Assembly (NCBI RefSeq): GCF_006345805.1
Contig: NC_043007.1
Span: forward strand, 58,590,001-58,654,000
From: Octopus sinensis
Taxonomy: Eukaryota
Direction: 5' to 3'
Length of the DNA: 64,000 nt
The number at the start of each line of letters is the position of its first letter. Within the stretch, counting starts at the first letter, position 1. The translations under genes and the position numbers were made by a program. The notes beneath the pieces are model-generated. The model did not search any database, was not told the DNA's origin, and saw only the letters and a list, made by a program, of their open reading frames with translations. Below are positions 25,996-59,974 of the stretch, piece after piece.

Positions 25996-25999
<4 letters not shown>

Positions 26000-27817: not shown

Positions 27818-27841
27818 CTGAAGAAAAACAAAAAGAAATAT

Positions 27842-34757: not shown

Positions 34758-34847
34758 CTTGTCAGCATCATCACCAGCTTCCAAGGATGCATTGACAGTC
34801 ATGGCTACGACACAGCGTAAAATACTTATACCAACAACCAATACCAC
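34758..34847 (-). CDS. TPRA1: TPRA1 coding exon 3 (90 nt)
   Basis: VVLVVGISILRCVVAMTVNASLEAGDDADK; tag/gtaagg sites; phase 0/0. Confidence 0.95.

Positions 34848-37972: not shown

Positions 37973-37977
<5 letters not shown>
37631..37977. repeat. Near-perfect long inverted repeat (arms about 155 bp, 36-bp spacer)
   Basis: 37631-37786 is the reverse complement of 37823-37977, with about 4 substitutions and 1 indel by eye. Confidence 0.95.
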
Positions 37978-38011
<34 letters not shown>

Positions 38012-38012
38012 C

Positions 38013-38043
<31 letters not shown>

Positions 38044-38094
38044 TACTATATATATATATATATATATATACATTATATATATAATATATATACA

Positions 38095-38126
<32 letters not shown>

Positions 38127-38165
38127 CATATATATATATATACATATATACATATATATATATAT

Positions 38166-38216
<51 letters not shown>

Positions 38217-38498
38217 ATACATATATATATATATATATACATATATACATATATATATATATACACACATATAACATATATATATATATATATACACACA
38301 TATATACATATATATATATACACACACATATATATACATATATATATATATACACACATACATATACATATATATATATATACACACATACATATACATA
38401 TATATATATATACACACACATACATATACATATATATATATACACACATACATATACATATATATATATACACACATACATATATGTATATATACACA
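37978..38498. repeat. Compound (TA)n/(CA) satellite between the two palindromes
   Basis: Visible directly in the sequence. Confidence 0.95.
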
Positions 38499-38677
38499 CA
38501 AAATTAAGAGGAATGACCACTAAAGTGGACACTAAACATAGTGCTAAACATAGGCGTCAAATCACCATTACCATGAAGAGTGCGTTCTCAAGAACACACT
38601 CTTTGTGGTAATGGTGATTTGATGTCTATGTTTAGCATATTAGGTGTCCACTTTAGTGGTCATTCCTCTTAATTTTG
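38499..38677. repeat. Hairpin/fold-back (arms about 90 bp, 2-nt loop)
   Basis: CAAAATTAAGAGGAATGACCACTAAAGTGGACAC...GTTCT-CA-AGAAC...GTGTCCACTTTAGTGGTCATTCCTCTTAATTTTG. Confidence 0.95.
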
Positions 38678-39269
38678 CATGTAACAATTTTTAATCTTTG
38701 GATTTTTTAAATATGCTAAGCCATTGGTTTCAATTGATTAATATCAATTTCTACCCTTATTATATATATATATATCATCAGTAAAACATAAATCCGAAAA
38801 AGAAGCACACTATAAGTTATATGGCAGTATATTATATAGATAAGGTTAAAGTAATCCCATAAACCTGCCTTGTCTAACTTTATCTATCTATCTATATATT
38901 TATGTATATAATATATATACATACATACATACATATATATTATAATGTCTGTCTTCCTCTAATTCTACTACAAATTCAGCTCTAAGAGCAAGATTATCAT
39001 AGTGGCATGCCATGGATAACCAGTCTTAAATTCCTGGTATGGCTTGGAAGAAAATGATGAATAGGAGGGGATTGAGGAACAAGTCCTAGTATACTCTAAC
39101 CTGCACACTGAATTCATTGCTGTATACACTACTAACTCTCACCTTACTAACAGCATTCCTGTACATAGTTAGAATGGCTTTCACCAGCCAATTGTCTACT
39201 CGTAGCTTCCATAGTGAACATCAGATCAGGGAATGAAGGACCTTGTTGAAGGCTTCCTCTAGTTCAATT

Positions 39270-39880
39270 ATTACCAAATACTATGGCTTACTTTTGGTTA
39301 AAAACTTCTACAGATTCCTTATTACATAAGTGAGCACAAAACCAAACTACATAAAACCCTGGCACAAAACCTTACTACATCTAATCTAGGCTCACTCTCT
39401 TCCTGTAACTTTTATGATCTGGTCCAGTAATCTGATACCTCTGTAATTACTTGTTTCTAAGGCATTCTCCTTTATCATCATAACAACTAGCTGTAATGCA
39501 GTTGCACCAGCCATTAGTCATGATATCTTCCTGTACAACTTGATTAACTATACTTATCCCATTTTGCCAGATATTTTAAACATCTTGGCAGCAGTTTCTG
39601 GTGGACCAGGGGCTTTACCTGTCTTCATGATTTTAATTGCTTAATCTATCATACTTACTGTTGATTAAAATGGTTGGTCCCTCTATCACATGCACAATAG
39701 GAAAACTCTCTTTCTTGCATGCATTCTCCATATTTAATAATAGAAGCATTTCCATGCCTCTTTCTGTCCAGAATCAATAAGTACAAGTGGGCCATTATCC
39801 ATTCATACTTCTCACACACAATGTCTTGACTGTCTCTTACACACTGTCTTGTCTCGCAATCCAGAACATCTCTTGTAGAA
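39270..39880 (-). mobile_element. Old RTE RT-domain fragment
   Basis: Degenerate GKAPGP motif and related RT-region remnants on the minus strand; multiple stops. Confidence 0.5.
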
Positions 39881-40027
39881 CAGTGGTTCTCAACCAGGGC
39901 CCATAGAAGATTTTGTTGTTAAAATTTATGTGCAATAAATTGCTTATACTTTTACAATGCACAAAATATAAAATTTTTTTTTTTTATACAATTACTAATA
40001 AAATTTATTTCGCTAAATATTATTAAT

Positions 40028-40352
40028 GAAGGCATGTGGCTTAGTAGTTAGGCTATTTGGATCACAACTGTAAGCTCGTGAGTTCAATTTCCAGTAACGT
40101 GTTGTGTTGTTGAGCAAGACACTTTATTTTATGTTGCTCCAATCCACTCAGCTGACAAAAAATGAGTAGTACTTGTATTCCAAAGGGCCAGCCATGTCAC
40201 ATTTTGTGCCATGCTGAATCTTCCTGAGAACTACATTAAGGGTACATGCATCTGTGGAGTGCTCAGCCACTTGCACATTAATTTCATGAACAGACTGTTC
40301 TGTTGATCAGATCAACTGGAACCCTTGTGGTTGTAACCAACAGAGTGTCAGT
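40028..40352 (+). mobile_element. SINE family C (GAAGGC..GTGGCTTAGT head)
   Basis: Colinear copy at 53353-53662; a copy with the same head and a different tail at 45232-45545. Confidence 0.8.
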
Positions 40353-40495
40353 TATAGTTATATTTAATTATAAAAAAAAACAAAAAACAGTAGAATTATT
40401 TTATATGCATTGAATGGGTATGGAGGTCCAGTAGAGTAAGGAGTCCATTGGCAAGAAATGGTTGAGAAACACTGCTGATCTTCAAGCTGTATAAC

Positions 40496-40545
<50 letters not shown>

Positions 40546-41216
40546 GTGTTTGTGTATAATCCTAATAAATCAGGATTATTTACCCTGTGTGATGTAATGA
40601 CAATAATACAAGTCTTCATTTAAAGGCTAGGTGAAGAGTGGTCATTGTGACATCTGGTTAATAATATCAAAGTAAAAGAATACAATCAGTTGTTGGCTGA
40701 TGATCAAAACCCACTTCACCTATCCAGTAAAAAACTGAGTACAACCAATTCATGGTGAAGCATGGTTTGTGATGAAATGAATGCTTAATTGTGTAGGTAA
40801 TGGAACAACAACCCTGAAATATTCAGGTTGTCATGTTATACACTAACATTAATGTTCACCTTCACATGAAATAATTGCTATAAACCAAAGAATAATGTTA
40901 TTCATGCAGCATAAACCAATTAATTCATTCGTGATCCAAACAAACTCACACCAAGTGTTCTTTAGTATATATCTACCAACTCACAACATTTTACATCATC
41001 CAACATACATTAACCATTACCACAGTTTCCATGTAACAAGCAACAAGTCTCTCTCTCTCTTTCTCTTGTATACACACATGCATGAACATAAACACAACTT
41101 CTTTCTCAATTAACTAGCACAGAGTCCATCTCCTGTCTTCATTGCTATACAAACACAGTAAATGGATTCAGTGCTCGGGTTTTCTGACTGACCTTTGTTT
41201 TAAACAAAGTGTATCA

Positions 41217-41429
<213 letters not shown>

Positions 41430-42484
41430 TCAAGCAAACAAAAGCAAATATGTAGCATTATTTAGGCTGAGTCATTACAAACATAGTCTGAGTAGATTTA
41501 TTTATGAAAAACCACAATCATTAAAGTCTATACTCTTGCTTTTATTTAATTTTTATGAATCTGTAATTAAATCACAAGTCTGCTCAATCATATACTTTGA
41601 CTGTGTTTAAACATGTAAACTTTATTTTATGTAAGATTTCAATGTGTCCATAGTAACTGTGAGCAAATGGATGAAAACATTGAAATTCTATGCAAGGTAA
41701 AGATCAATATATTTAATCCCAGACTAAGCTAAATATAACAAATACAGTATCTGATATGAAATAGAGAGCAAGCTGATCACAATACAGTGTTAGTATCACA
41801 CAAAAATATATCATATTACCATTCTGCATCGCCAACTACCTGTAACAAAATATCGGATATCAAGGATCTTATGCCCCAACCAAATCCACTTTAGTTTCAA
41901 AATCTATTGAGTCACTGCCAAGTTTTTAATTGGCAGTCTCTCTCCCATAGATCTATTCAAGCAGAGTATAGTATGACAACTATTATGTCATTGAAACCCT
42001 ACAACTATCAATTACAACAGAAATTACTCTCAACATGTCTTTAAAAAAAAGAAAAAAACAAGGGATATATTGGATGGTCTAGTCCTACGTAGATTGTGTC
42101 TAAATAAGAGACAGAATGGTGAGGACTGGAATGCCTTGTATCACAGGTTTGCTGGATCAGGACTAACCTGGAACTAAAAATAGCAGCAACACTGCTACCA
42201 CTACAAATACTAACTGCATAAGCTTAGGCACAATTGAATCATCATCATTATCTAATATGCATGGTCTTCCAAAATGTTTCCAAGCGCTGGATCAGCTTGA
42301 TTTCATGTGTCTAAGTCTAATCAAATACAGGTGAAAAGGTTATTTAATCACAGCAACTACAGTTGCTAATATGACACAGTTTTGGAGCAAAATATCAAGC
42401 AAATTGTTATGAAATAAAATGGAACAATGTATATGGCATGTAAAAATACTGAACAGAATTATATAAATTTTTACACTTCCTAAC

Positions 42485-42759
42485 CTCTCCTTTATATCTT
42501 TGTAAAGGACTTGTAAGCAAAATGGTTCTTCTTGGAAAGTTGTATTAGCAAAGGGCTCAAAATTGGGAGTTGTGTGAGCATCAGTTGTTGATGTCGTCAG
42601 TGTGGTCATTGCTCCTGTTGTTACAATCGTGGAAGTCATTGTAGCATTGGTACTATCTAGATATTTCAGTGGACTGTTGGAGAAGAATACATGTGATGTA
42701 GCTGTTGCCTTGGCCATCATATGCACATTGAAACTGTCAAATTTCTTTGCGTCACCCAT
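42485..42759 (-). CDS. TPRA1: TPRA1/GPR175 coding exon 1 (275 nt)
   Basis: ATG in AAGATGG context. Encodes MGDAKK...EEPFCLQVLYKDIKE(R), matching the TPRA1 'CLLLLYEDIG' region. Phase-2 donor AG|GTTAGG at 42484; the exon acceptor ttttag is at 42811. Confidence 0.9.
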
Positions 42760-45700
42760 CTTTGTACTGCAGTATGTGTGCAGCTACAACTTCTTTCAAC
42801 TCATTGCCCCCTAAAAGAAGTTTAAAAAAAAATTTATGTGGATTAAAAAAAAAGATTTATATATCGATTAAAATTTTCTTTTAAAATAACCTTATATTTG
42901 ATGTACACTCACTCAAATCATTCTCTAATATAATACAAAAGAAATATTTAATCCAGTAATACACAAATAATGAATGCAAACAAAAATAGCTTTTGACAAT
43001 GAAATTCTGTGGGTTTTGTATCAGGTGGATGATAGAATCAGTAGAGCATCAAACAAAATATATTGTGGTACTCTGTGAAATCCTTTTACATTCTGAGTTA
43101 AAATGTTACTCAAATCCACATTACATTTCATCTTTCCAAGGTCAATGTAATTGACAATATTTTAGAGATCAGTATCCCAGCATGACCAAAAACCAATGAA
43201 AGAAACCAGTAAAAGAGAAAAAACAGTATGTACTTCATGACTAATAGAACTAACAAAATCTAAAAGTGTATTGCCATAGAACTATATAAGTCCATTTCAT
43301 TTAACTGATTTCATTTTACATAACTGAAATTTCTATTCTATTTCTTCTTGTATGAGTAGCTGGTTTTATTTTATGTCCACCTTCTGTGATATGTGGAATA
43401 GAGCATATATGTTGAATTGTCCTGGGTTGCATACTTAATAAGCAAATAACATGATTGAAAAAAAAATGCTTGAAATATAAAGCAATAATTTTTTTTTATA
43501 TGGTTAAATTTCTTTGGCTTAGTAATTAGTAATGAAAACAAGTGCATTTCCTAGCTTCTAAGACACCAGGGATGAGACAAATTAATCAATCAAGGAAACA
43601 AACATGACAAATCAGTCGCACCTAATTGCTTGGTGTTTGGAAGTTAGATGTAAGGTGAGAGATATGAAATTGGTTGCTAATGTGATGTTAAACGTGAAGT
43701 GGGAAAGTGTGTTTAGTCATGTCAGTGTTATCAACTACCCTAGCTATCTATATCATAGCAGATTAAATGTCAATGTTCATGTATAATACTCTTAGCAGTA
43801 AAAGCAATTCCCAGTCAAATATTTCATACTTTATTTTTATCTGTGTTTGTTTAATTCCATGTGCAATTGTCCATCTATCTACCTGTATATTGGCAAGGAT
43901 CAGTTAATCAATGTTCTTGAAATGTTGGACTATTGTCACAACCAAACACTAATAGAAAACGTTGGTGGCAAACACTTTGAAGTAAGAGACTTAAGGTCCT
44001 AGCAAGTCAAACAAGCAATTCGATTCAAACTTCCAATTTTTGACTGAAGGTTGCATAAGAAATATTCATGGGAAAAGCATATACATCAAAACTTCACATT
44101 TCAAATAATCCAAGGCATTGTGATTATTTGAAATATGATATTGTGATGCTCATATTTTCATCTTTCATTCCTTTACCAGTTTCAGATATTAGATTGCAGC
44201 CATGTTGCTCCAGTGCCTTCAGGGGTTTTATTACTGAAAGGGCTTAATATTTTGTCCGGGACTTGAATTAGGAGAAGGGCAAGCAAACATGACCTGAACA
44301 TTAAAAGGACATAACTGAATATTACGTAGATTTTTTAGTTCAACTTACTGCCATTTCTGCTATCATAGTCTATATAGGTGACAGGCTTCTGCACAATTTC
44401 TGTCTATGAAATTTCACCTGTGAAGTTTTGGTTGACCTGACACTATGGTAGATATACATGATGCAGTGAGATATTATTTAAGAAATTAACATCATTTTTC
44501 ATAGAGGTATGAAGCCCCAACATAGCTCAACTTGAACAGGCATAACCAAAAGTTATGATGTCCATGCATTAGATGAATGTGTGCAAGATTACATGTATTT
44601 GTGAGTATGTAAATGGCAACAGCAATAATAAAGAGTAATTCTAGAAAAGCTATGTTGAGATTCCTGATAGGGAGTAAAGAAAACTTTGCTTTCCAATACC
44701 AAGAAGGGTCTCATTAACAATGACCAAATAGTCAAAGTTAAGAGGTCATACCTATCTTCCGACACATGAACAGGAATAGAGTAGAAAGAGTCACCACCTG
44801 ATACCTGCCTCCTAAGAAACATCAACTGGTATTAGCATCATCTATATTTCCCTAAGAAACTTTCTCATTATATGATCAACAATTTCTATCAGTACACCAC
44901 TGGAAGAATTCCTTATTAATATGTGTTCCACTACAGACTGAAAAGGATAACAACAGAAAGGGAAAACTGCACTGAAAATCATTTGTGTTCCACTTATCTT
45001 CAAGCTAAATATTTACTAGTGTTGCTATACAAAAAAACAGCAAGCAATATTGTCTCAGGCAATAGCCACTAAAGGTATATGTAACTAGACAATATCTAGT
45101 TAACATTTTTCATACCAACCCACCTGTGACTTCACCAGGTTCTTTGATACAAACTTCATGTTTTAGTGATCTGAATCAAAATCTTCCATTAAAATCTCAT
45201 GTTTATTTCTGTCCCAAATATCAGCTTAACATTGGATGGCTCAGTCATTAGAGTATCAGGCTCACAATCATGAGATAATGAGTTTGATTTCTGGACCAGG
45301 CTGTGCGCTGTGTTCTTGAGCAAGATATTTTATTTCACGTTGCTCCAGTTCACTCATCTGTAGATATGAGTTGCGATGTCACTGGGGTTAAACTGTATCG
45401 GCCATTGGTGGCATGGAGAGGGGAGGCTGGTATGCATGGGCAACTGTTGGTCTTCCATAAACAGCCTTACCAAGACTTGTGCCTTGGAGGGGAACTTTCT
45501 AGGTGCAATCTCATGGTCATTCAGGACCAAAGGGGGTCTTTACCCTTCTTTATTGCACACAAAATATACATACTAAACACACAGACAAGTACGCACATAC
45601 AGACACAGATGCAAATGCATGCACAGATAAGGATACACACCATAGAAAGACAGAATAGACTAAACAGCACAGGAGGAGACACATGGGATGGAGAGTTGCT

Positions 45701-46289
45701 GGAGAGGTCACAGGTTGTGTGATGAAAGATTTCAGACAATGGACACTAAAATAAAAATAATAATATAACAATAAAGCTGAAGTGAAGACCAAGTGCATGT
45801 GGTTAATTGGCAAAAAGAAAAATATGACTATACCCAAATATAACAATATTGACCAATTTATTTTACTAAATCATTCATTGCAAAATTATTTATGTTCCAA
45901 ATATCAGCGTAATACTGAATAGTTATTTTACCAAATCATTCATTGCAAAATTATATTATATTATTCACTACTACATCCTTTTTGCTGCACTAAACCAATA
46001 AGCTGAATTCATAGAATATATGACCACTTTCACTTTCAAAGTTAGTTAATAGATATTCCAATGTTGAATGAATGAAACAGAACTACAGATAGCATCCTAA
46101 ATGCATACACATGTGCATGCATGCATGTAAGGCATCAACATATAGTACTGTTTACCTTACATATAACAGGCATACATAAGACTCAACACATTTATAACAA
46201 TTATATATCTTATAACAAGGATGTATTCAGGACTTTTATGTTTTTATGCCAGAAATTAAAGCATGCATATATATATATATATATATATA

Positions 46290-46503
46290 CAGGGTTGGCC
46301 AAAAGTCACCTGACAATAAAAAATATTTAATTCCAAGATTTATTTATGTTTAACAACTGAATGATTTTAATAACAGCATCTAAATATGAAACATGAAAAT
46401 TGTTCAAACTGAAGTACTTGAGCAACATATGTTTCCATTTGAGTCAATACAGAATTATAGATAGTATTTATAGAATTTTAATTTACTGTCGGGTGACTTT
46501 TGG
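46290..46503. mobile_element. Tc1/mariner-type MITE (right TIR clipped by a GT microsatellite)
   Basis: TA|CAGGGTTGGCCAAAAGTCACCTGACAATAAA at the left end; TTTACTGTCGGGTGACTTTTGG at the right end is its reverse complement. Confidence 0.75.
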
Positions 46504-46523
46504 TGTGTGTGTGTGTGGTGTGT

Positions 46524-46571
<48 letters not shown>

Positions 46572-46572
<1 letters not shown>

Positions 46573-48088
46573 CATCATCATCATCGTTTAACGTCCGTTC
46601 TCCATGCTAGCATGGGTTGGACGGTTCGACCGGGGATCTGGGAAGCCAGAAGGCTGCACCAGGCTCCAGTCTAATCTGGCAATGTTTCTACAGCTGGATG
46701 CCCTTCCTAACGCCAACCACTCCGTGAGTGTAGTGGGTGCTTTTTACGTGCCACCTGCACAGGTGCCAGGCGAGGCTGGCAACGCCCACGGTCGGATTGG
46801 TGCATTTTACGTGCCACCGGCACGGAAGCCAGTCGAGGCGGCGCTGGCATCGGCCACGAGTCGGATAGTGCTTTTTACGTACCACCAGTCCAGGGGTCCT
46901 GGCTGGTTCAATTCGATTTCGATTTCACTTGCCCCAACATGTCTTCGCAAGCAAAGGGGGTTGGCATGGGTGCCTGTCGTCGGATGAGGTTCTATATCGA
47001 CTTCACTTGCCTCAACAGGTCACCGAGACGGAAGCCAGTCGAGGCGGCGCTGGTACCGGCCACGATTCGGATAGTGCTTTTTACGTATCTCCGGTCCAGG
47101 GGTCCTGGCATCTGCCGGGTGCCAGTCATAGGACTGGTTCAATTTCGATTCCGATTTCACTTGCCCCAACAGGTCTTCGCAAGCAAAGGGGGATTGGCAT
47201 AGGTGCCAGTCGTCGGATGAGGTTTGATATCGACTTCGCTTGCCTCAACAGGTCTTTGTGTGTCCAAGGGAGGAAAGGCATGCATAAGTGGGCTGGACTC
47301 ACTTGTCCTGCCTGGTCTTTTCACGCACAGCATATTTCAAAAGGTCTCGGTCGCTGGTCATTTCATCAGTGAGACCTAAAGTTCGAAGGTCTGCTTCACC
47401 ACCTCGTCCCAAGTTTTCCTGGGTCTACCTCTTCCATGAGTTCCCTCAACTGCTAGGGATTGGCACTTTCTCACACACCTATCTTCATCCATTCTCGCCA
47501 CATGACCATACCAGCGCAATCGTCTTTCTTGCACACCACAACTGATGCTTCTTAGGTACAACATTTCTCTCAAGGTACTAACGCTGTCGAGTATGTACAC
47601 TGACATTACACATCCATCAGAGCATACTGGCTTCATTCCTCATGAGCTTACGCATGTCCTCAGCAGTCACGGCCCATGTTTCACTGCCATGTAGCATGGT
47701 TGTTCGTACACATGCATCATACAGTCTGCCTTTTACTCTGAGCGAGAGGCCTTTAGTCACCAGCAGAGGTAAGAGCTCCCTAAACTTTGCCCAGGCTATT
47801 CTTATTCTAGCAGTTACACTTTCAGCGCACCCAACCCCACTACTGACTTGGTCACCTAGATAACGGAAGCTATCAACTACTTCTAGTTTTTTCCCCTGGA
47901 AAGTGACGGAAGTTGGTTTCTGCAGATTTTCGGAGGTTAATGCTCCCGAGCATCTGCCACATACAAAAACTATCTTCCCAGTTAGCCTACCTTTGACATT
48001 GCTGCACCTCTTATGTGTCCATAGCTTACACTGGGTACATCTTATAGAATTTCTACCTACACCTTTTCTACAGATCGAGCAGGGCCAT
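46572..48088 (-). mobile_element. 5'-truncated RTE LINE (RT C-terminal half with embedded C4HC3 finger, repeat-expanded 3' UTR)
   Basis: EVVDSFRYLGD, RIAWAKFRELLP, LHGSETW, RLRWYGHVARM, GRGRPRKTW motifs; (GAT)n tail at about 46572. Confidence 0.9.
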
Positions 48089-48125
48089 CATATATATAAA
48101 TATATATATATCACACACACATATA

Positions 48126-48987
48126 CAGGGTGTAACGGGTAAATTGTTGCCATTTTATATTTTCAATTTTGTGCATGCACATTGTTTTGTTTTTGTTTTG
48201 TCAACTACAAAGTATAGTAGGGTTGACTGGGCATTGTCTATGAGAAAAACAGCACCATGACGCAGTTCACTCTTCCAGAAATTTGGAAATGACATGCTGT
48301 ACTGCTTGGCATTCACGCTGGAAGCTCTAATATGAACATTTCAGAGTGCTTGGATGTCAATCTGAGGAGATGTACCAAGAGTGATAAAAAATCAAACATT
48401 CAGTCAACATCATAGTGTTTAGAGTGATCACTAGTGATAGCAATGTTATTCCTCCATTCATCTTCCCACATGGCCTCAAACTCAACATGGAGGCCTGAAA
48501 TAGGTAGGTAGTGCTGCCCTGAGTCAAAAAGGTGGCTGTTGGAAGACCCTATGTCTGGCAACAGGACTCTGCACCATGCCAGACAAGCAGGAAAACCTAG
48601 TCAAGGCTGTCAAACAATTTCTGCAACCACATCACCCCTAAAATCTGGCCACCTAACTCCCCAGACTGCAACCTCCTCAATTATTTTGTGCAGGGCACGG
48701 TTGAGTGAGAGACCAACAAAACTTATAACACCAAAGATGAACTGAAGGCAAGAATTATGGCAGCATTCACCAACTCAAACAAGGAAAACGTCCAGAAGAG
48801 TTGCAGGAGATCCCAAAGTTGTCTGGAGGCCATGGTTGAAGCCAATGGCAATTTTATAAAATAAATTTACTCTTTAGAATTTCAAGATATTTTTATGTAA
48901 TTTTGGTAAATATATCTGTTAAAATGTGATGTCAGTGTTATTTTTATTTTTGCGTAATTTAGATGACAGTTTATCCATCGCACCCTG
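48126..48987 (+). mobile_element. Internally deleted maT/DD37D-type Tc1/mariner element (862 bp)
   Basis: TIRs CAGGGTGTAACGGGTAAATTGT and (rc) CAGGGTGCGATGGATAAACTGT with TA flanks; remnant motifs YVWQQDSAP and WPPNSPDCN. Confidence 0.85.
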
Positions 48988-49099
48988 TATATACACATAA
49001 TCATTTATTCCTTTGTCATCTTACTTTCTTATATATATATATCGTCAGTAAAACATAAATCCAAAAGAGAAGCACTCTCTAAATTATAGAGCAGTAGAG

Positions 49100-49212
49100 T
49101 ATTTAGAGAAAGATAGTTATGGCAAGTTCATAGGGTTACCCATGGTTTCGCATTCATAAAGCACTTAGCTTTACATGTCTCATCAGACCTTGACTATCTT
49201 TCTCTAAATATA
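49100..49212 (-). ncRNA. Type I hammerhead ribozyme motif with intact core, within a short TA-flanked insertion (49042-49212)
   Basis: Minus strand: GGT-CTGATGA-G(A)CATGTAAAGC/TAAGT/GCTTTATGAATGC-GAA-ACC/ATG/GGT-A|ACC. All core nucleotides are present, and stem I is extended by ATTTAGAGAAA(A)GATAG inverted repeats. Confidence 0.7.
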
Positions 49213-50904
49213 TATATATTTCACTTGGCAACTGCTTCAACAAATTCTGTGTGATCCATGCAAGCATAGAAAAGAATATGTTGAAATGATGATGATGATG
49301 ATTTAGATAGACTGACTGAGAGAAATGCAGTGGGGTTAAATTACTATCGACTGGATGTGTCAAGTGCTTATGAGATTTAAAATCAGTATCAGGTTTTAAA
49401 AAGATAAGCAGGAGAAACTGAACTAAACAGGCAAGCGATAAAAACAGTATAAATACAGCTATCAGCAGATGAGGCCAGGGACATTATCCCAAGGATATCT
49501 TATATGCTCATATAACAATGTCCAATGTGTGTGTGTTAATATCTAACATAGAAGATGAGAAAATGTAACATCACCAACAATATTTGAATGTCAGGTCTAC
49601 TGTAAAATATATAGCTGTGCTAGCAGCTACGCTAAAGCAAACATCACAATATTCACTGACCAAATTAAGAGATTTAACCTAATTAGCTAAGATTATAAAC
49701 CAATGTCCAGTCAACAGAAATCTTAGTCCACACAATATCAAGGTTTGGTATTATACATTTACAAATGATGATATGGAAAATTACTTTTATAATCAACTGA
49801 GTAATGATCACAATTTCAGTATCACACACTCCATTGATGCCACACATCACTGATACTATCAAATAATGTCCAAGTATTTAGAACCATACTGCAAACAGTA
49901 CAAGTTACCATCCCTCTTTCTGTTATCTACAAACACACCATAATAAACTACTGTTAGCTGTATCCATCCCAACTGCTCTGTGCAACTACTTTTATTCTTA
50001 AATCAATATCCACTGCCAAATCCATATATAATTAGTCTCAACAATGAAATTAGGCCTCAAGAGGGGCATATTAATCAACCTGCTTTCTCTTACTTCCAAA
50101 GACGCCAAAAGTAAACTGCAGAAGACTACTTATTGATTTCAAATTTTGGCAGGAGGCCAGCAACTTTAGGGGAGGAGTTAAGTCAATTACATCAACCCCA
50201 GTACTGAACTGGTATGTATTTTATCGACTCTGAAAGGATGAAATGTAGTCAACCTCAGCTGAATTTGAACTCAGAACATAAAGACAAACAAAATACTGCT
50301 AAGTATTTTGCCCAGCATGCCTGTGATTCTGCTAAGTATTTTGCCCAGCATGCCTGTGATTCTGCTAGCTCACCATCTTAAAGACTGCTTGTTAACATGT
50401 AAACAAGTATGAACTTAGACAAAACTCACATAATGGTATAAAGGTTTTGAAAGCATAGGTCATAAGTGATATCCCCTCATGGGGCAAAATTTTCCAGCAA
50501 GACAAAATATGTATAAAATGATCCCACATTATTAATAAGCCATGATATATTGCTACACTAGTAGATATTTTTATTATTAGCAGAGGATAAGGTAGTGAGT
50601 TGGTAGAATCATTAGCATGTCAGGCAAATGCTTAACATTTCTTCCAGCTCTTTAAATTCTGAGTTCAAATCCAACTTTGCCCTTCATATTTTCAAAGTCA
50701 AAAAAGTACCAATTGAGCACTGAGGCTGATGTAATCAACTAACATCTTCCCTCAAAACCATTGGACTTCTGCCAAAATTTTAAACAATTATTAGCAGTAG
50801 ATGGCCTTTTATAGATCTGCGTACTTACATTTCATTGGGTGAAAGAGTATCAGATGCCTAATGTAAAAATTAGCAGTTTATTATACCATCACTACTTCAG
50901 TACT

Positions 50905-51056
50905 GTGTCCATATAGGATTACATCCTACCCTGATGTAATCTCCAGGGATACAGGCATCCAGCAACAGGACCTCCGAAATGCCATGATGGATCGTGAAGT
51001 CTGGCGTAACATGGTAAATTCCATTGTCTCGACCACGGTCGAACAATGATGATGAT
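50905..51056 (+). mobile_element. Short CpG-intact RTE 3' end with (GAT)n tail
   Basis: DTGIQQQDLRNAMMDREVWRNMVNSIVST-like RTE terminus followed by ATGATGATGATG. Confidence 0.6.
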
Positions 51057-51699
51057 GTCTGTGTCCATAACAAAACTTTCAATGACCCAGTTCACCAAAC
51101 TATAAGTGGGTACAATATAGTTGAATGATCATGAGAATGCCGCTCAGGTAACATACTGCACACATTACACAAAATCAAATCTATAGTTGTAACAAAACGG
51201 AGAGTGAAGATAGTACAAACATATCCAGAGGCAACATTGCACTCTACACAATTAACCACTCCAGGTCAAAGTGTGTAATATCATACTCATCAAGGCAAAG
51301 ATATCATATAAGCTGTTGGCTGCCTGTCACAAGGGAAGTTTGATTAATGCTGACCTGGAACTAAAGTGCATAACACTCAGCATGAAATGTTGAACTAGAT
51401 TAATAACGACAACAAATATTTAAAGGCCATTACCTAAGTAGGGTTTCGTCTTGCAGAACACCTTGACAGTCTTCATTTTTAACCATAGTTTTTTTAAAAT
51501 TCTTTTTTAATGGTTTCAGTCATTTGACTGCAGCCATATAAGAGCACCACCTTGAAAGGTTTTTAGTCAAATGAAGTGACCCCAGTACTAATTTCTTTTT
51601 AAAGCCTAGTACTTATCCCATCAGTCTCTTTTTGCCGAAACGCCAAGTTACGGGGACATAAACACAGCAACAATGGTTGTCAAGCAAGTGATTGAACAC

Positions 51700-52088
51700 A
51701 CACACAGAGCGCCTTGTTTCCCTGGGCATGGATTCACTGAAGCTCCGGCGTCTAGCGACGGACTTGGTAAACACCCACAAGGTTATCAACCACCTCACCA
51801 ACAACAACACTGAACACCTTTTTGATCTCCATGTGTCTAACACACGTGGACATGCCTACAAAGTCAGAAAACAGCACAGCTCCCATGACTTTCGGAAACA
51901 TTTTTTCACGCTCAGGGTTGCTGAAGCGTGGAATAAACTGCCTGCATCAGTTGTTGACTGCCATGACCCTGCATCCTTTAAGGCCCTCATGCTTCCCGAA
52001 ATCCGTCGAAACTACACCTGATTATATATACACTTTAGATGAGTTGTAGTGCACCTGAGCACTGTACACAATTATTATTATTATTATA
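51700..52088 (+). mobile_element. 5'-truncated CR1/L2-type LINE 3' end inserted into a SINE
   Basis: SLKLRRLATDL...NTRGHAYKV...RKHFFTLRVAEAWNKLP is a typical CR1 C-terminus, followed by an (ATT)n tail. The two halves of an antisense SINE lie on either side. Confidence 0.85.
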
Positions 52089-52663
52089 TTATATATATAT
52101 ATATATATGACTGGCTTCTTTCAGTTTTCACTCTCAAGGTTTTGGTCAGCCCAAAGCTATAGTAGAAGACACTTGCCCAAGATGCCGTGCAATGGGACTG
52201 AACCTGGAACCATGTGGTTGGGAAGCAAGCTTCTTACCACACAGCCACACCTGTGCCCATACACATCATGGTTCCAATATTGAAGCAGTGTTTTACAGTT
52301 GGACCCTCTTGCTGATACCAAACCCCTTAACTTTTGATTAACAAGCAGGGAGGGATAACATGTGCCTATTCTAAAACCTGGGATAACGAATAGTATGGAA
52401 TGTTATACTGACACTTCTATCAGTGTTTAATGAATAGATAATTAATGAAACAAAAATATTTCATTTTCTAAACCAGCAGAATTAGTTATTGGTAACCCTT
52501 CATCTACTGGCAGAACAACCAATTCATAAAGGGAGAGGTGGAATGTGGAGGTAATAACAATGCTATTGTTAAAGTAACTATCACATGTTCAACAGCTAAC
52601 TCGAAACAATTGTCTCCTATTTCATACTTTTAGGGCAAGTGAGAAAAACTTTCTGTGTGTGTG

Positions 52664-52715
<52 letters not shown>

Positions 52716-55700
52716 TTCTGTATAGCTTACAAAGTTATGCAACAATAACATAATTATACTTGTTAACAAGACCAGATACAGAAACAATTTCTAAAAAAAC
52801 CATGTATTATAATGTTTTTGACTTGGATTAAAATTTTTATGAGTATAAGAGATAAAGTATAGATATATATTTGCACACTTGTGTGTGTGCACGCACGCAC
52901 ACATGCATATTCACCTTAGTGCCTACATATGCACACATATTCTGTAACTGATTCCTTTACACATTTCTATGAAAGGTGTAGTCTTGTCATTTCACATACA
53001 CTATATATTAATATGCACAGCTTCAAATTCAAATATACAGTTAAACATTATCGCAATCAATATTATCTATAAGACCTCCCCCAACATGTGGAAGTGTGAG
53101 AGATCATGATGACTCTCTAAGTATAATTAAAAGATTTGTGCAGCTAGAAATTTTGGGGTTTGTTGTTTTTTAGGAGTGGGGGATGGGCTTGTTTTTGGCT
53201 TTGTGTTTTAAAGCTTGTCCCATTTACAAATCATTAGTTGTTGGGATATTATAATTTTAATAAGTCTTAATGTATGTAAGAAGAGGTTTGAAATCCCAAG
53301 TGAGCATGTACAATCTCTTGACATTCCTTTTTGATAATTATACATTGTTTGAAGGCATGTGTCTCAGTGGTATTCAGCTCACAATTGTAAGGTCATGAGT
53401 TCAATTCTTGGTGGTGCATTGTGTCCTTGAGCAAGATATTTTATTTGACATTGCTCCAGTCCACTCACCTGACAAAAATATGTTGTATCTATATTTCAAA
53501 GAGCCAGCATTGTCACATTGTCATGCTGAATCTCCCTAAGAACTACATTAAGTGTACATATGTCTGTGGAATGCTCAACCACCTGCATGTTAGTTTTACA
53601 AGCAGGCTGTTTGGTTGATCAGATCAACTGGAATCCTCATCATTGTAACCAACAGAGTGCCAGTAGTAGGTAACATTATTTGAGAAGCACATCTCTACCT
53701 TTCCAAGTACAAATTAAAATAATCTCGAAATAAAATAATCTCATGAATAAATTAAATAAATCTCAGAACAAATTAACTATTTAAATATAATATAGGATCT
53801 GTTTAGGTTATTAATCTTTGAACTTAGATTGCTTTGTTTTAAATTGGAATTTATTTCATCATTTGACTTCAGTCTACAATTGCTGTGTTTACTTATGGGT
53901 AACAAAAGTCACCTTTAATATAACAACAGTTTATGTCAAGCTACATTTACCAATATTTCATGATGTGTCAAACATAGAAGCTAGTGGAAGCCATACAAGA
54001 AGTCTGCACTTGTATGCACATCCTGTCCACCACTGAACCATTAAAACACTGGGAATCCATAATTGCAGTATATCAGTGCTAAGAAGACAACAGTATATAA
54101 GTGAAGATCATATATTTGCACCATGGAGGGTCTCCATGACAAACTCAAGAAGTTAAAATATAAACAAATGAAGTCACTTGTTGAGTGGTTAAACAAATGC
54201 CCACAATTAATAATCTTCTATCTTTTGTTTCAGTCATTCGACTACAGCCATGCTGGGGCACCACCTTGAAGAAATTTTTAGTCAAATGAATCAACCCCAG
54301 TACTTTTTTGTTAAGCATGGTGTTTATTCTATTGTTCTCTTTTGCCAAACTAAGTTACAGTGATGTAAACACACCAACACCAGTTGTCAAACAGCAGTGG
54401 AGAACTGACACAAACACAGACACATATATAAAACCCATGCCAGCATGAAAGGTGGACATTAAATGATTATGATATATATATATCATCATCATCACTGTTT
54501 AACGTCCATCCTCTATGCATGCACAGATAGGATAGGAGCCAGTCAGGTAGAAAAACTACCCTGGCTACTGTGTCTGTTTTAGCAGAGTTTTTACAGCTGG
54601 ATGCCCTTCCAAATATATATATAACAGATACTTTTCAGTTTCTGTCTACCAAATCCACTCACAAGGCTTTGGTTGGCCTAAGGCTATACTAGAAGACACT
54701 TGCCCAAGGTGCCATGCAGTGGAACTGAACCCAAAACCATGTTGCTGGGAAGCAAGCTTCTTACCACACAGCCATCCCTTTTTAAAACATTTACATTCAA
54801 TGAATAGACTGATTGTACATCTTTATTCAAGTATAATACATACCCTTTTTCTTGATCTTTAAAACTAAAATTTAGGGGTGCATGTTAAACACAAAAACTG
54901 AATGCCCTGGTCCAAAGTGCATGGCCGTATTTGGAAAACTAACCAATAACTAAATCACTATAATATAAATTTTTCAGTAACAGTGATGATAAATTTTCAC
55001 TATATTTTTTAAGTAAGCATTAATCCTCTTCATCAAAGAGAGTGGCCTTACACTTCTGCTGTGGAGGACGGGTCTTCATGAGTACAGCAAGGTGCCAGAT
55101 ATCTCAGTCCTTTGTCATCTCTTCTAAAGGGTTCAGTGTCCTGAGGTCATTCCTACATTCCAAAAGCTATTATCTAGCATTATAAAAAGGCAGAAATTGT
55201 TGTCAGGGGTCTCTTACCTTAATAGTACAGAGCGCTCAGCCAGAATGTGAGAGGTACAGGGTGTGATTCTCTGTAGAGGCTAGCTGGTCACTTTTTTCCG
55301 TCTTCTAAAGGGTATTTATTTTATTCTTTTACTTGTTTCAGTCATTTGACTGCGACCACACTGGAGCACTGCCTTAACGGGTTTTTTAGTTGAAGAAATC
55401 GACCCCCAGGACTTATTCTTTGTAAGCCTAGTACTTATTCTATCAGTCTCTTTTGCCAAACTGCTAAGATATGGGGACATAAACACACCAACATTGGTTG
55501 TCAAACAATGGTGAGGCAACAAATACAGACAAAGATAAACACATAAATACATACAAGACTTTGGTTGGCCCAAGACTATAGAAGGCACTTGCCCAAAGTA
55601 CCATACAGTGGAACTAAACCTGGAACCATGTAGTTGGGGAGCAAGCTTCTTACCACACAGCCATGTCTGCACCTATTTATTCAATCTTCTAAGTTGTCTT

Positions 55701-57588
55701 CACAGCAACCCTGTGCTCCAGAATTCCTTTATTTTCTGTAGAATTTTGATGTGATTCTTTTATTTTCAGAATGATATTGTAGAGTGAAAGGATAGATGTG
55801 ACCAGTTTGAACATAAAACAGAAAGAATATTTGGGGAGGATATGGTCAGTTTAAATGCTAAAGGGTTAAATATCTAAATTTTATATCTTTAATAGTCATC
55901 ACACATAATTGTTTATATCAGAGATTATATCAATTTGTCCAACTAAATATAGCAAAATTTTACTCATAATTGCTGAGATGAAATAATAAGGAAATGAAAT
56001 TGACATTAGTGCCAATGAAACACTTTTTTTTTAGATATAATTTCATAATCTACAGATGCTGTTTGTCTATGGTATCATCCCATGAAATTACAAACTGAAG
56101 CATTTTTCAGAAAATTTAAAATGTTATCTGAGCTTATTCAGATTTTAAAAACTTGTGAGTGGATTTCGTAGATGGAACCTGAAAGAAACCGTGTGTGTGT
56201 TTCCTCTTACCTAGACATCACATGATGGTTGTAAATGAGCATGATAGAAGTGACATTCTTCATGAAAAATGTCTAGCTATGGGAAAACAATATCTTGCTT
56301 TTAAACAGGTGAGGGTCAGTCACAAGAAAGGCATCTGACCATAGAAAATCTGCCTCAACAAATTCATTCTTACCCATGCAAGCTTAGAAAAGTGGATATT
56401 AAAAGATGATGATGATATTTACTGTCCTCAGAATATCATGCCGCTGCTAAAGAAGTTTCTTTTTAAGCCATTACATTCTCTTTCTCGGTCCAATTTTCAG
56501 TGCAATCTCTAAACTAACTGGACTGAAATAAATATACTAAAGCAATCAACATCCTGCTTGGTATTGAGTACAGCAGCAAATATTCTTTTTTAAATGATCT
56601 CACAGATCTCTCAAAAATGCTTTACTCTTCTACTCAGCACCATCCAATGTTAACTATTAAAGAATATCATCCCAGTACTCTAGGGATTTCATCTCATAGA
56701 AAATACAATCTAGTGTTCAGTTCAGCAGTAAATAGCTTTGTTAATATCTTTGCTATCAACACATTATGTTAATTTGTTATTAATTGGAATTTTTTGTGTA
56801 TCTATGCATGAATTACTATCCAAACATAATTTTTCATTGTTTTCATTGCTGCCATATAAAATCTGTATTCATAACATCTGAGCTCTTTAACTACTTATAA
56901 TTCTAGTACCTCTTAAACTGGAATAGGTTTACATTTTTAGAGCTATGCCATGTATATTAAATAACACAACTTACACAACACATGAATTTCTCAATTGACT
57001 GACACAAACATCATCATTCTCATTTACAACCCATGTTCCATGAAGGCATGCAATATATAAATATCTCTCCCAACAAACACATGCAAATCTGACCATTATT
57101 AATGTTGAATATTTAGCTTCATAATAGCCCGTGTATGAATTACAGTCCAAACACAAGCTGTCTGAATGCTTTGCTGCCAATTTTCAACTTATATTCGCTA
57201 CAAGTGTCAGAATGTGTAATACTTACGTACTTTGAATTCTAGTGCCACTTAAACTGGGTAAGTAAATGGACACTCATACATACAACTTTATTTTTATAAC
57301 TGAGAATCCTTTATTATATAGAGACGTACATGTTTATATATTTACATATATAACATATATACAATACACATATTTATACACATGTATGTGTATATGTGTA
57401 TGTATATATGTATATATATATATATATATATATTGACAATATTAAAAATAAGGATTACTCCGAAGTAGTAATAACATTACCTTTAATTCTGTAATTATAT
57501 ACTGCATTTATTGGATTTATGTTAACTGTTGAATAGCATATTTTGAATATCTGAAAGCAAACTGGTAATTGTTTGGGAGTAATCCCTT

Positions 57589-57627
<39 letters not shown>

Positions 57628-59796
57628 GCACACACACACGTGGCTGTGTAGTGAGAGGCTTGCTTCCCAACCACATGTATCCACGTTCAGTCCTACTGTG
57701 TAGCAACTTTGGCAAGTGTCTTCTGCTACAGCCTCAGGCCAACCAAAGCTTTGTGAGTGGATTTGGTAAACAGAAACTGAAAAAAGCCAGTCGTATATAT
57801 ACATATGTAATGTGTGTGTGTATATATAAGCACAGGTGTGGCAGTATGGTATGAAGTTTCCTTCACAACCACATGATTTGAGGTTCAGTCCCACAGTGTG
57901 ACAACTTGAGCAACCAAAGTCTTGCGAGTGGACTTCATTGAGAGAAACTGAAGGAAGCCAGTCACATGTATGCATGTATCTATGTATGAGTGTGTGTATG
58001 TTTGACATCATGTGGTAGTTGCAAATGAGTATAATTGTCACCTGAGTTATGTCGTTCCCTTCCAATATACTTCAAAGACAAGTCTGGCAATGGGAAAATA
58101 TTAACTTGCTTGAAAACAAGTGAGGGTTGGTGACAGGAAGGATATCCATTCGTGGAAAATCTATTTCAATAAACTCTGACCGCCATGGAAAAATAGCTGT
58201 TAAAATGATGATTATGGTATATAACTTTATGATTTACCTTTTACTTGTTTCAGTCATTGGACTGTGGTCATGCTGAAGCACCGCTTTGAAGGGTTTAGTT
58301 GTACAAATCAACACCAGTACTTATATTTTAAGTCTGGTACTTACTCTATCAGTTTTTCTTGCCAAACATAAATAAAACAAACACCAGTTGTCAAGTGGTG
58401 GTGATGGAACAAAGATACACCACATACACACAACGGTGTTTTAGTTACTGTCTACGAAATCCACTCACAAGGCTTTGATCGGGTCGGGGCTATATAAAAA
58501 GAAAAAAAAAACTACTTGCACAAGGTGCCATGCAGTGGGATTGAACCCAGAACCAGAAGACTGAGAAGCAAACTTCTAACCAAACAGTCAGTATGACACA
58601 CCTAGAAGCGAAATACCTTGTAGTAATTATTCCGGTTGTCTATGTTGTAAACTGAACCCAGCTGATGTCAACTATGTCTTTTGGGACCCATAAATAAGTA
58701 CCAGTAAACGGCGTTAGACTTGTGGGACCGCTGGTGCCGAGTGGGATGCTTTGTATGATATTTGTATCTATCAGCCATCATGGAAAGAACTGGAAATACA
58801 CTACGTACAAGCTCATAGTGAACCATCGAGCAACAGAGTGAGCCACGTTATTCGACCTACTGAGAGCAGACGATACATGATGATGATATAAAAGTACAGG
58901 GAATGTTTAGTGTTCCGAATGATGAAGAATATGTATGTGTGAAGTACCCGATATGGTGTAGAGTTGAAATTACGTCAACAACACTGAGCTTATTTATACA
59001 GCACCAGAGGAGAGTATTTAGAGAAAAGATCAGATGTGATGAGACGAGGTGAAACGCTTTAAAAGGCCTTAACGAAGCGAAACGAAAATACAACTTTCAG
59101 AGGCCACAAAGCATCCACCCCGTTCTTCTGACTAACTAACATTAAGTCCTCAAATGAATATTTAGATACATCAAACAGAAAGTGATGAATATATTTATCA
59201 ATTTTCTACCCATAAATAAGTACATGTGAGTATATATATATATATATATAATCGATGAACTACAATTGTTATCAGGAAAGAAAAATTCAATGGAAAATGA
59301 TTTTTGGTTAAGTTTTGGTGACAAAACCCGGAGAATGAGCTTGTACCTCATATAAGTGCGGCTCATTGAATGGAATATTTCACTAATTCTAAATTTTAGA
59401 GATATTTAATGCCGAAATAATTATTATCTAAAACTTCTTTTTCAAGAATTGTTCATTTATGAAAAAACATTTTAATCATTCATAATCTTAAAAAGCTTCC
59501 TAGTAATTTAAACAAAGCAATATATATTGTTAAAATATACGCTTTTAAAGCCATCATGTGTACAAACACACATTATACATATATATATATATACACACAC
59601 ACACACGTATATCATTATTCTTGCAGGTTTGTTTGGGTTTTGAAACCTAAACTAAAGGTCTGCTTCTCTCAAAAAAATTTTTTTTCGTCTCATGAGTAAT
59701 TTAGTAGTTATATTAATGTATCGATTATGTGTTCATATCCATTGACAAATATCGGTACCTAATTATTGATCGTATTTATAAAGTGTATTTACTTAC

Positions 59797-59960
59797 CAGA
59801 AGCGATGTAGACGACATACGAAGTAAAGATGGTGATTACAACGATAACAAGTAGGCGGAGACCTAAAACTGGAGGAGGTGAGGAGATATCGTGAGAGAGG
59901 GACATATAGACATAGAGAGAGAAGGGGAGAGAAGTAAGAGGCTTGCAGAGACAAATTCAC
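59797..59960 (-). other. TPRA1: Probable first (5' leader) exon of TPRA1; intron 1 about 17 kb
   Basis: Strong donor CTG|GTAAGTAA at 59796, CpG-retaining region immediately downstream of tandem ETS motifs, and the next strong acceptor is the TPRA1 exon at 42810. The linkage and 5' end are inferred. Confidence 0.65.
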
Positions 59961-59974
59961 CACTTCCGCTTCCG
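59961..59974 (-). promoter_or_regulatory. Tandem ETS/GABP-type motifs (CGGAAGCGGAAGTG), probable TATA-less housekeeping promoter
   Basis: Two abutting CGGAAG cores directly upstream of the candidate first exon, in CpG-rich sequence. Confidence 0.6.

What the first reader, a model, noticed from the sequence alone, without database searches (positions are those of the whole stretch)
42752..59905. Spliced upstream ORF encoding a candidate 55-aa single-pass membrane microprotein that overlaps the TPRA1 start (possible bicistronic transcript)
Seen in sequence: the ATG at 59905 in the putative first exon opens 36 codons plus 1 nt up to the donor. Joined in phase 1 to the acceptor at 42810, it stays open to TGA at 42752-42754, giving MSLSHDISSPPPVLGLRLLVIVVITIFTSYVVYIASGGNELKEVVAAHILQYKDG*. 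It has a ~20-residue hydrophobic segment (LLVIVVITIFTSYVVYIAS) preceded by Arg. Its stop overlaps the TPRA1 ATG (ATGGGTGA). The leader also holds a second uORF (ATG 59911, 16 codons) and a Met-Ser-stop mini-uORF at 42804 in frame with TPRA1. Inference: either an unannotated small membrane protein co-encoded with TPRA1, or a strong translational-control arrangement. I do not recognise the peptide. Caveat: pyrimidine-rich leaders give hydrophobic frames by chance, and the direct exon join is assumed.
Basis: partly seen in the sequence, partly recalled or inferred. Interest (0 to 1): 0.7.

Follow-up and report, generated by a model that had tools for sequence, protein, structure and literature searches.

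The report
Ordinary upstream ORF in octopus TPRA1 leader
The 55-codon upstream reading frame and its splice are really there in the leader of the Octopus sinensis TPRA1 gene, but a related octopus breaks the peptide with frameshifts and an early stop, so it is an ordinary non-conserved upstream ORF and not a hidden membrane protein.

Summary
ATG 59905, the donor after 59797, the acceptor at 42810, the TGA at 42754-42752 and the 55-aa peptide are all as stated. The main ORF is the Octopus sinensis TPRA1 homolog (XP_029643012.1/XP_029643013.1, Pfam PF10160). The assumed exon join is confirmed by an mRNA contig from another octopus (L003), which carries the same junction.

The microprotein reading fails the one comparative test available. 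TPRA1 is under strong purifying selection between the two species (dS 0.255, dN/dS 0.064, one in-frame indel). The leader of the other species has a +1 insertion and a -1 deletion. These replace 14 residues of the hydrophobic segment with NHHFYFVCRLHRSW. It also has two amino-acid changes and a TAC>TAG stop, and no synonymous change in the exon-2 part.

The open frame is not unusual for this pyrimidine-rich sequence (P = 0.15). No relative of the peptide was found in any searched database.

The best reading is a non-coding leader with four upstream ATGs. The three in exon 1 have weak contexts, and the TPRA1 ATG has a strong one. The long ORF is a common out-of-frame overlapping uORF with, at most, a mild repressive effect.

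Whether the transcript start lies upstream of 59905 is not shown.

The parts
59797..59950 (-). Non-coding leader exon 1 of the TPRA1 homolog. The 3' end (59797, donor G|GTAAGT) is firm. The 5' end is unknown. The cross-species mRNA evidence reaches only to 59861, and 59950 is a guess from promoter-like motifs.
   Evidence: mRNA contig L003 aligns to 59861-59797 at about 94% identity and continues directly into exon 2.
59961..59974 (-). Tandem ETS-like motif CGGAAGCGGAAGTG. Together with a CRE-like TGACGTAA at 60065-60058, it makes a candidate core promoter just upstream of the leader. This is an inference only.
   Evidence: Read directly. GC content rises to 0.45 at 59800-59999, against 0.2-0.3 in the flanks. 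The motif meaning rests on general knowledge of metazoan promoters and was not tested.
59863..59913 (-). uORF 1: ATG 59913-59911, 16 codons (MSICPSLTISPHLLQF), stop TAG 59865-59863. Weak context (T at -3, T at +4).
59797..59905 (-). Exon-1 part of the 55-codon uORF (codons 1-36 plus 1 nt). ATG 59905-59903 has a weak context (T at -3, T at +4). The hydrophobic segment LLVIVVITIFTSYVVYIAS is encoded at 59854-59798.
42811..59796 (-). Intron 1, 16,986 nt, GT..AG. It contains interspersed repeats and retroelement-like ORF fragments.
   Evidence: The junction is confirmed in L003. O. bimaculoides is colinear with it at 84-92% identity, as far as the window equivalent of 54551.
42752..42810 (-). Exon-2 part of the 55-codon uORF (codons 37-55 plus TGA 42754-42752). 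It overlaps the TPRA1 ATG by 8 nt, out of frame.
42796..42804 (-). Mini-uORF ATG AGT TGA (Met-Ser-stop), in frame with TPRA1. G at -3, A at +4. Identical in all four octopod sequences compared. It also ends the 11-codon uORF that starts at 59817.
24057..42759 (-). TPRA1-homolog CDS in 10 coding exons: 42759-42485, 41406-41274, 34847-34758, 33105-33033, 32385-32306, 29778-29650, 28529-28469, 27817-27715, 25332-25252, 24312-24057. The start ATG 42759-42757 has a strong context (A at -3, G at +4).
   Evidence: The spliced translation equals P0002 = XP_029643012.1/XP_029643013.1 exactly. Pfam PF10160 Tmemb_40, E = 1.8e-64. Locus in GCA_006345805.1 CM016869.1.

Best explanation
The interval is the non-coding 5' leader of the Octopus sinensis TPRA1 (GPR175-family, PF10160) gene. 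A first exon ends at 59797 and is spliced across a 16,986-nt intron to 42810, 51 nt upstream of the TPRA1 ATG.

The leader carries four upstream ATGs. The 55-codon ORF is an out-of-frame overlapping uORF. It stays open, and it reads as hydrophobic, largely because exon 1 is pyrimidine-rich: few stop codons, and T or C at codon position 2. Its peptide is not under protein-level selection.

Likely mechanism (inferred): most scanning ribosomes pass the three weak-context exon-1 uATGs and start at the strong-context TPRA1 ATG. The minority that start at 59905 terminate 5 nt past the TPRA1 ATG and are mostly lost to TPRA1 translation. This would give at most a modest cis-repression that does not depend on the peptide sequence.

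Shown: the sequence features, the gene identity, the splice junction (in a relative), and the lack of peptide conservation. Inferred: the TSS position, leaky scanning, and any repressive effect.
For: - Sequence and frames were verified.
- The gene is the annotated TPRA1 homolog of O. sinensis. The exact CDS was rebuilt from the window.
- The exon1-exon2 junction is present in mRNA contig L003, from the octopus metatranscriptome SRR3401912.
- In L003, a T insertion at codon 23 and a 1-nt deletion at the junction put codons 23-36 in another frame: VITIFTSYVVYIAS becomes VNHHFYFVCRLHRSW.
- The three substitutions in the exon-2 part are E>K, I>T and Y>stop, with none synonymous. The uORF then ends 4 nt before the main ATG instead of overlapping it.
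- Over the same divergence, the TPRA1 CDS shows 60 synonymous and 16 nonsynonymous differences, dN/dS 0.064, and only one indel, which is in frame. Fisher test of the uORF against the CDS gives p = 0.012 to 0.004.
- The frame stays open by chance in 15% of shuffles. TM-grade hydrophobicity is common in shuffles.
- The peptide has no relative among 5.8 billion proteins, in Pfam, or in the PDB.
- Out-of-frame overlapping uORFs are about 14% of all uAUGs across 478 eukaryotes, and uORF peptides evolve neutrally overall (PMC7889888).
Against: - Only one comparison species covers exon 1, and its contig starts 44 nt downstream of the ATG. Conservation of the start codon was therefore not seen.
- The two indels compensate each other, so an ORF in the orthologous frame stays open into exon 2. 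This could reflect selection to keep a uORF.
- The 11-residue core ITIFTSYVVYI is still encoded in L003, in a frame that is open from the contig start. An alternative uATG could in principle still give a hydrophobic peptide there.
- The hydrophobicity score of 2.4 is in the 1.3% tail for its frame.
- The leader is much more conserved at the nucleotide level than synonymous sites (about 5% against 21.6% differences, p about 1e-6). Some constraint therefore acts on it, of unknown nature.
Confidence: 0.8

Rival explanations
1. A selected regulatory uORF. The long uORF is kept open and ends at or next to the TPRA1 start because its translation tunes TPRA1 output, whatever the peptide sequence. It may act together with the conserved Met-Ser-stop uORF.
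For: - The +1 and -1 indels in L003 restore the frame, so the orthologous frame stays open and ends within 9 nt of the main ATG.
- The leader is about 4 times more conserved than synonymous sites.
- The 51-nt exon-2 leader is identical in O. sinensis, O. bimaculoides and the SRR11869385 species, while the flanking intron is 8-12% diverged.
- The mini-uORF is conserved in all four sequences.
Against: - Two 1-nt indels have opposite signs half the time by chance.
- Nucleotide conservation does not point to uORFs specifically.
- The uATG contexts are weak.
- The stop-start overlap is not conserved.
- There is no significant RNA structure (z = +0.5) and no Rfam match.
- There are no translation data.
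Confidence: 0.15
2. A lineage-restricted (O. sinensis/vulgaris clade) single-pass membrane microprotein is translated from the TPRA1 mRNA, which would make the transcript bicistronic.
For: - The ORF is intact in O. sinensis, with a 19-residue segment of Kyte-Doolittle mean 2.4 preceded by Arg.
- The junction is real.
- The score is in the 1.3% tail of shuffles for this frame.
Against: - The peptide is not conserved in a related octopus at dS 0.25.
- The start context is weak.
- No homologue was found anywhere.
- The composition alone explains much of the hydrophobicity.
- There are no expression or translation data.
Confidence: 0.04
3. The uORF is not in the mature mRNA at all. Either the transcription start lies downstream of 59905, or the main transcript uses another leader. 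Two RefSeq transcript variants encode the same protein.
For: - The mRNA evidence reaches only to the window equivalent of 59861.
- Two protein accessions (XP_029643012.1 and XP_029643013.1) share one sequence, which implies two transcript models.
- The ATGs sit only about 50-70 nt downstream of the ETS-like motifs.
Against: The ETS-like and CRE-like motifs, and the start of the pyrimidine tract, lie upstream of both ATGs. This favours a TSS near 59950-59920, but it is inference only.
Confidence: 0.15

Closest known systems
Out-of-frame overlapping uORFs (oORFs) of eukaryotic 5' leaders, as catalogued by Zhang et al. 2021 (PMC7889888)
   Same: An upstream AUG in the leader, a stop inside the main CDS in another frame, a peptide that evolves without constraint, and an expected repressive effect by diverting ribosomes.
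   Different: Nothing substantive. This one spans an intron and happens to read as hydrophobic.
ATF4 uORF2 / GCN4-type delayed-reinitiation leaders
   Same: A long uORF that overlaps the main start out of frame, plus a very short uORF in the same leader.
   Different: The order is wrong. Here the 2-codon uORF lies inside, and downstream of the start of, the long uORF, 36 nt before the main ATG. In the ATF4 type it is 5'-proximal. The switch logic therefore does not apply, and the overlap is not conserved in the related octopus.
uORF-encoded functional microproteins (human MIEF1-MP, ASDURF; plant CPuORFs; fungal arginine attenuator peptide). From my own knowledge.
   Same: Position in a leader upstream of a conserved main ORF, and a similar length class.
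   Different: Those peptides are conserved across orthologous leaders. This one is frameshifted and truncated in a close relative.
Single-pass membrane micropeptides (sarcolipin, phospholamban, myoregulin, DWORF; insect sarcolamban). From my own knowledge.
   Same: About 50 aa with one hydrophobic helix of about 20 residues.
   Different: No sequence similarity, no conservation, and it is encoded in a leader and not as a main ORF.

Membership tests
[quoted passage not shown] | ATG upstream of the main start, with its stop inside the main CDS in a different frame | tested here: met
   ATG 59905. TGA 42754-42752 lies 3 nt after the main ATG 42759-42757, with the frame offset by 1.
[quoted passage not shown] | Both parts lie on one mature mRNA (the exon join is real) | tested here: met
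   mRNA contig L003 from a related octopus joins the orthologous exon-1 and exon-2 sequences at the predicted sites. This was not shown for O. sinensis itself.
[quoted passage not shown] | The upstream ATG lies downstream of the transcription start | not testable with these tools
   The transcript evidence begins 44 nt downstream of the ATG. Only promoter-like motifs upstream of it are available.
Conserved-peptide uORF / uORF-encoded microprotein | The peptide is conserved in orthologous leaders, without frameshifts or stops | tested here: not met
   L003 has a +1 and a -1 indel, which recode 14 residues of the hydrophobic segment, and a TAC>TAG stop.
Conserved-peptide uORF / uORF-encoded microprotein | An excess of synonymous over nonsynonymous change | tested here: not met
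   The exon-2 part has 0 synonymous and 3 nonsynonymous/nonsense changes, against 60 and 16 in the TPRA1 CDS. The number of sites is small.
Conserved-peptide uORF / uORF-encoded microprotein | Evidence of translation (ribosome footprints, peptides) | not testable with these tools
   No Ribo-seq or proteomics data are accessible.
Single-pass membrane micropeptide families | A hydrophobic helix of about 20 residues | tested here: met
   The 19-residue Kyte-Doolittle mean is 2.4. The same threshold class (>=1.6) appears in 22-59% of shuffles.
Single-pass membrane micropeptide families | Sequence relationship to a known family | tested here: not met
   No Pfam family. No candidate among 5.8 billion proteins. 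Only chance 13-14-residue PDB matches.
ATF4/GCN4-type reinitiation leader | A short, reinitiation-permissive uORF lies 5' of a downstream inhibitory overlapping uORF | tested here: not met
   The 2-codon uORF (42804-42796) lies within the long uORF, 3' of its start.
TPRA1/GPR175 family (main ORF) | A match to Pfam PF10160 Tmemb_40 above the gathering score, with orthologs named TPRA1 | tested here: met
   218 bits against a cutoff of 25. The sources name it 'transmembrane protein adipocyte-associated 1 homolog' in three Octopus species, an oyster, a sea star and others.

The most novel reading that the evidence does not exclude
A young, octopus-lineage-restricted single-pass membrane microprotein is translated from the TPRA1 leader. 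A variant of this reading is that the hydrophobic core ITIFTSYVVYI is kept translatable in different species through different upstream ATGs and frames. That would make it a de novo membrane peptide being born inside a conserved leader.
Probability: 0.04. Interest if true: 0.45.

Novelty: new member of a known kind. Interest (0 to 1): 0.1.

Why it matters
It matters little. Upstream ORFs, including ones that overlap the main start, are found in a large share of eukaryotic mRNAs, and most of their peptides evolve neutrally (PMC7889888). The useful result is negative. A pyrimidine-rich leader produced a convincing-looking transmembrane peptide, and one transcript from a related species was enough to show that it is not conserved. 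The one mildly interesting leftover is that the leader is far more conserved at the nucleotide level than synonymous sites of TPRA1. That points to some non-coding constraint, either promoter-proximal or translational.

Tried and rejected
- **Peptide search.** The 55-aa peptide found no candidate among 5.8 billion proteins.
- **TPRA1 exon-1 search.** The same tool returned only a genomic read-through ORF from another species (P0001), not the identical annotated protein. Its word index is therefore incomplete for partial queries, and a negative result from it is weak evidence.
- **Multiplexed search near exon 1.** Eleven ORF translations from around exon 1 were searched together, to pull genomic contigs of relatives. 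3250 candidates were collected and none scored.
- **Exact look-ups.** The 38-aa, 56-aa and 139-aa genomic ORFs are not on record.
- **O. bimaculoides flank.** The 10-kb upstream flank stops at the window equivalent of 54551, 5.2 kb short of exon 1.
- **O. vulgaris.** The protein could not be located.
- **Metagenome scan.** A conserved 25-mer from exon 1 gave 0 hits.
- **Other TPRA1 homologs.** The hits checked (10 of the 13 best after the two octopus entries) are oyster, snail, echinoderm, arthropod and bird proteins, plus one unnamed Logan sequence. No other cephalopod was named, so there is no squid or cuttlefish leader to compare.
- **RNA structure and families.** Rfam gave no hit in the whole window. 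The leader fold has z = +0.5, so a structured RNA element is not indicated.
- **Literature.** Searches for TPRA1 with uORF terms gave 0 papers.
- **Rejected idea: an N-terminal extension of TPRA1.** The uORF is in a different frame.


Full report
**Where the window comes from.** The main ORF that starts at 42759 on the minus strand matches a 426-aa protein exactly over its first two coding exons (P0002). The sources name it 'transmembrane protein adipocyte-associated 1 homolog [Octopus sinensis]', XP_029643012.1 and XP_029643013.1. It hits Pfam PF10160 Tmemb_40 at 218 bits. It is encoded on GCA_006345805.1 CM016869.1, so window position x corresponds to record position 58,590,000 + x.

I rebuilt the ten coding exons from the window with GT/AG sites. 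Their translation equals P0002 residue for residue: 42759-42485, 41406-41274, 34847-34758, 33105-33033, 32385-32306, 29778-29650, 28529-28469, 27817-27715, 25332-25252, 24312-24057.

**Checking the observation.** The minus-strand sequence shows ATG at 59905-59903, then 36 codons plus one base up to G 59797, followed by GTAAGT. The acceptor is TTTTAG|G, with the exon starting at 42810.

The Met-Ser-stop uORF is at 42804-42796, in frame with TPRA1. It reads MSSTSLLGAMS* across the junction.

Start contexts, read:

| ATG | -3 | +4 |
|---|---|---|
| 59913 | T | T |
| 59905 | T | T |
| 59817 | C | T |
| 42804 | G | A |
| 42759 (TPRA1) | A | G |

By the usual purine(-3)/G(+4) rule (general knowledge), the three exon-1 uATGs are weak and the TPRA1 ATG is strong.

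**Is it more than chance?** Exon 1 is 68% pyrimidine. In dinucleotide-preserving shuffles, the 54 codons after the ATG stay open 15% of the time. A 19-residue window with Kyte-Doolittle mean >=1.6 arises in 22% of shuffles in a fixed frame and in 59% in any frame. The observed 2.4 is reached in 1.3% and 4.2% respectively. The length is uninformative and the hydrophobicity is only mildly unusual.

**Is the exon join real?** Yes, at least in a relative. The 90% cluster of P0002 contains a 423-aa Logan protein (P0150). It lies on a 1,418-nt contig from run SRR3401912 (L003). A paper describes this run as the octopus metatranscriptome of the Shi et al. invertebrate virome survey (PMC11662614). L003 has 116 nt of 5' UTR. 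The first 65 nt align to window 59861-59797. The next 51 nt align to 42810-42760. The switch falls exactly at the predicted donor and acceptor. The contig begins 44 nt downstream of the ATG at 59905. It therefore says nothing about the start codon or the transcription start.

**Is the peptide conserved?** No. Relative to O. sinensis, L003 has these differences:
- A T inserted in codon 23 (GTTGTAATC becomes GTTGTTAATC).
- One base fewer at the junction (ATCGCTTCTG|GGGGC becomes ATCGTTCCTGGGGC).
- In the frame orthologous to the uORF, the sequence then reads LRLLVIVVNHHFYFVCRLHRSWGNELKKVVAAHTLQ*.
- Fourteen residues of the hydrophobic segment are replaced by a His/Arg-rich stretch.
- The three substitutions in the exon-2 part are E43K, I49T and Y52stop. 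None is synonymous.
- The uORF ends 4 nt before the main ATG and does not overlap it.

Across the same two species, the TPRA1 CDS has 60 synonymous and 16 nonsynonymous differences (dS 0.255, dN 0.016, dN/dS 0.064) and a single in-frame 3-codon indel. The contrast in substitution type is significant even with so few sites (Fisher p = 0.012, or 0.004 if the exon-1 changes are counted). Frameshifting indels alongside an intact neighbouring CDS are the signature of non-coding sequence.

The peptide also has no candidate relative among 5.8 billion proteins and no Pfam family. It has only chance 13-14-residue matches in the PDB.

**Caveats to the negative result.**
- Only one species covers exon 1, and only part of it.
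- The two indels cancel, so an ORF in the orthologous frame remains open. For two 1-nt indels this happens half the time by chance, but it is also what selection for an open uORF would give.
- The core ITIFTSYVVYI is still encoded in L003, in a frame open from the contig start (SAYLLSLLITIFTSYVVYIVPGAMS*). The T insertion removes the TAA that closes that frame in O. sinensis. If that species has an ATG in that frame, it could also make a hydrophobic peptide. I regard this as another sign that T-rich sequence reads as hydrophobic in several frames. I could not exclude the alternative.

**Nucleotide-level conservation.** The leader differs at about 6 of 114 aligned positions from L003, against 21.6% at synonymous sites (p about 1e-6). 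The 51-nt exon-2 leader is identical in O. sinensis, O. bimaculoides (L004) and the species of genomic contig L001. The adjacent intron is 8-12% diverged (p = 0.008). Something therefore constrains the leader as nucleic acid. It is not a known RNA family and not a stable fold (z = +0.5). The constraint could be promoter-proximal or translational. I leave it unexplained.

**Mechanism.** The most likely picture is a standard leaky-scanning leader. Ribosomes mostly bypass the weak exon-1 uATGs. Some translate the 2-codon uORF and may reinitiate 36 nt later. Those that start at 59905 terminate just past the TPRA1 ATG and contribute little to TPRA1 synthesis.

This is the behaviour expected of out-of-frame overlapping uORFs. 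They make up about 14% of upstream AUGs across 478 eukaryotes, and uORF coding regions evolve neutrally overall (PMC7889888).

It is not an ATF4/GCN4-type switch, because the short uORF lies inside the long one instead of upstream of it.

The TSS is not established. ETS-like (59974-59961) and CRE-like (60065-60058) motifs upstream of the pyrimidine tract suggest a start near 59950-59920. That would include both ATGs but place them close to the cap. This is inference from general promoter knowledge.

**Verdict.** The finding is an ordinary, non-conserved overlapping uORF in the TPRA1 leader, not a hidden membrane-protein gene. Interest is low.

Noticed in passing
window 59861-59797 and 42810-42760 (minus): The TPRA1 5' leader is much more conserved at the nucleotide level than synonymous sites of the CDS: about 5% against 21.6% differences to the SRR3401912 octopus. 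The 51-nt exon-2 leader is identical in three species whose introns differ by 8-12%. There is no Rfam match and no significant fold. The cause of the constraint is unknown.
   Followed up: partly
window 42784-42766 (minus): A small hairpin, GCTGCA-N7-TGCAGT, ends 7 nt before the TPRA1 ATG. It appears in the centroid fold. The two nearby substitutions in L003 fall in the loop and just 3' of the stem. It is too small to be judged.
   Followed up: no
window 5255-5133 (minus): First coding exon of a Rab-7L1 (RAB29-like) gene lies about 19 kb downstream of TPRA1 on the same strand, 100% identical to O. bimaculoides XP_014789470.1 residues 1-41. An O. vulgaris model (CAI9730211.1, 549 aa) fuses TPRA1 residues 1-379 to Rab-7L1. 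This is probably a read-through or a mis-merged annotation.
   Followed up: partly
window 12374-13618 (minus): A 415-aa open frame with a PIF1-like helicase domain and a Pif1 2B domain (E = 1.8e-65) lies between TPRA1 and Rab-7L1. It is most likely a Helitron-type transposon remnant.
   Followed up: partly
window 26489-26854 (plus): A mariner-type transposase fragment (Pfam Transposase_1, E = 3e-19) lies inside a TPRA1 intron.
   Followed up: partly
window 60500-60900 and 46600-47400: A GC-rich (up to 62% GC) interspersed repeat. Its translations share motifs such as LDALPNANHSVSVVGAFYVP. One copy sits about 600 bp upstream of leader exon 1. It has no Pfam match.
   Followed up: no
window 22517-23298, 37960-38532, 61800-63640: Long TA/CA-type microsatellite tracts give runs of '[10 protein letters not shown]' pseudo-ORFs on both strands, with strong GC skew.
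   Followed up: no
window 47376-47636 (minus) and 51692-52021 (plus), inside intron 1: ORF fragments that resemble the C-terminal tails of LINE-type reverse-transcriptase proteins (for example RLRWYGHVARM). This is my recollection. Pfam gave no hit.
   Followed up: partly
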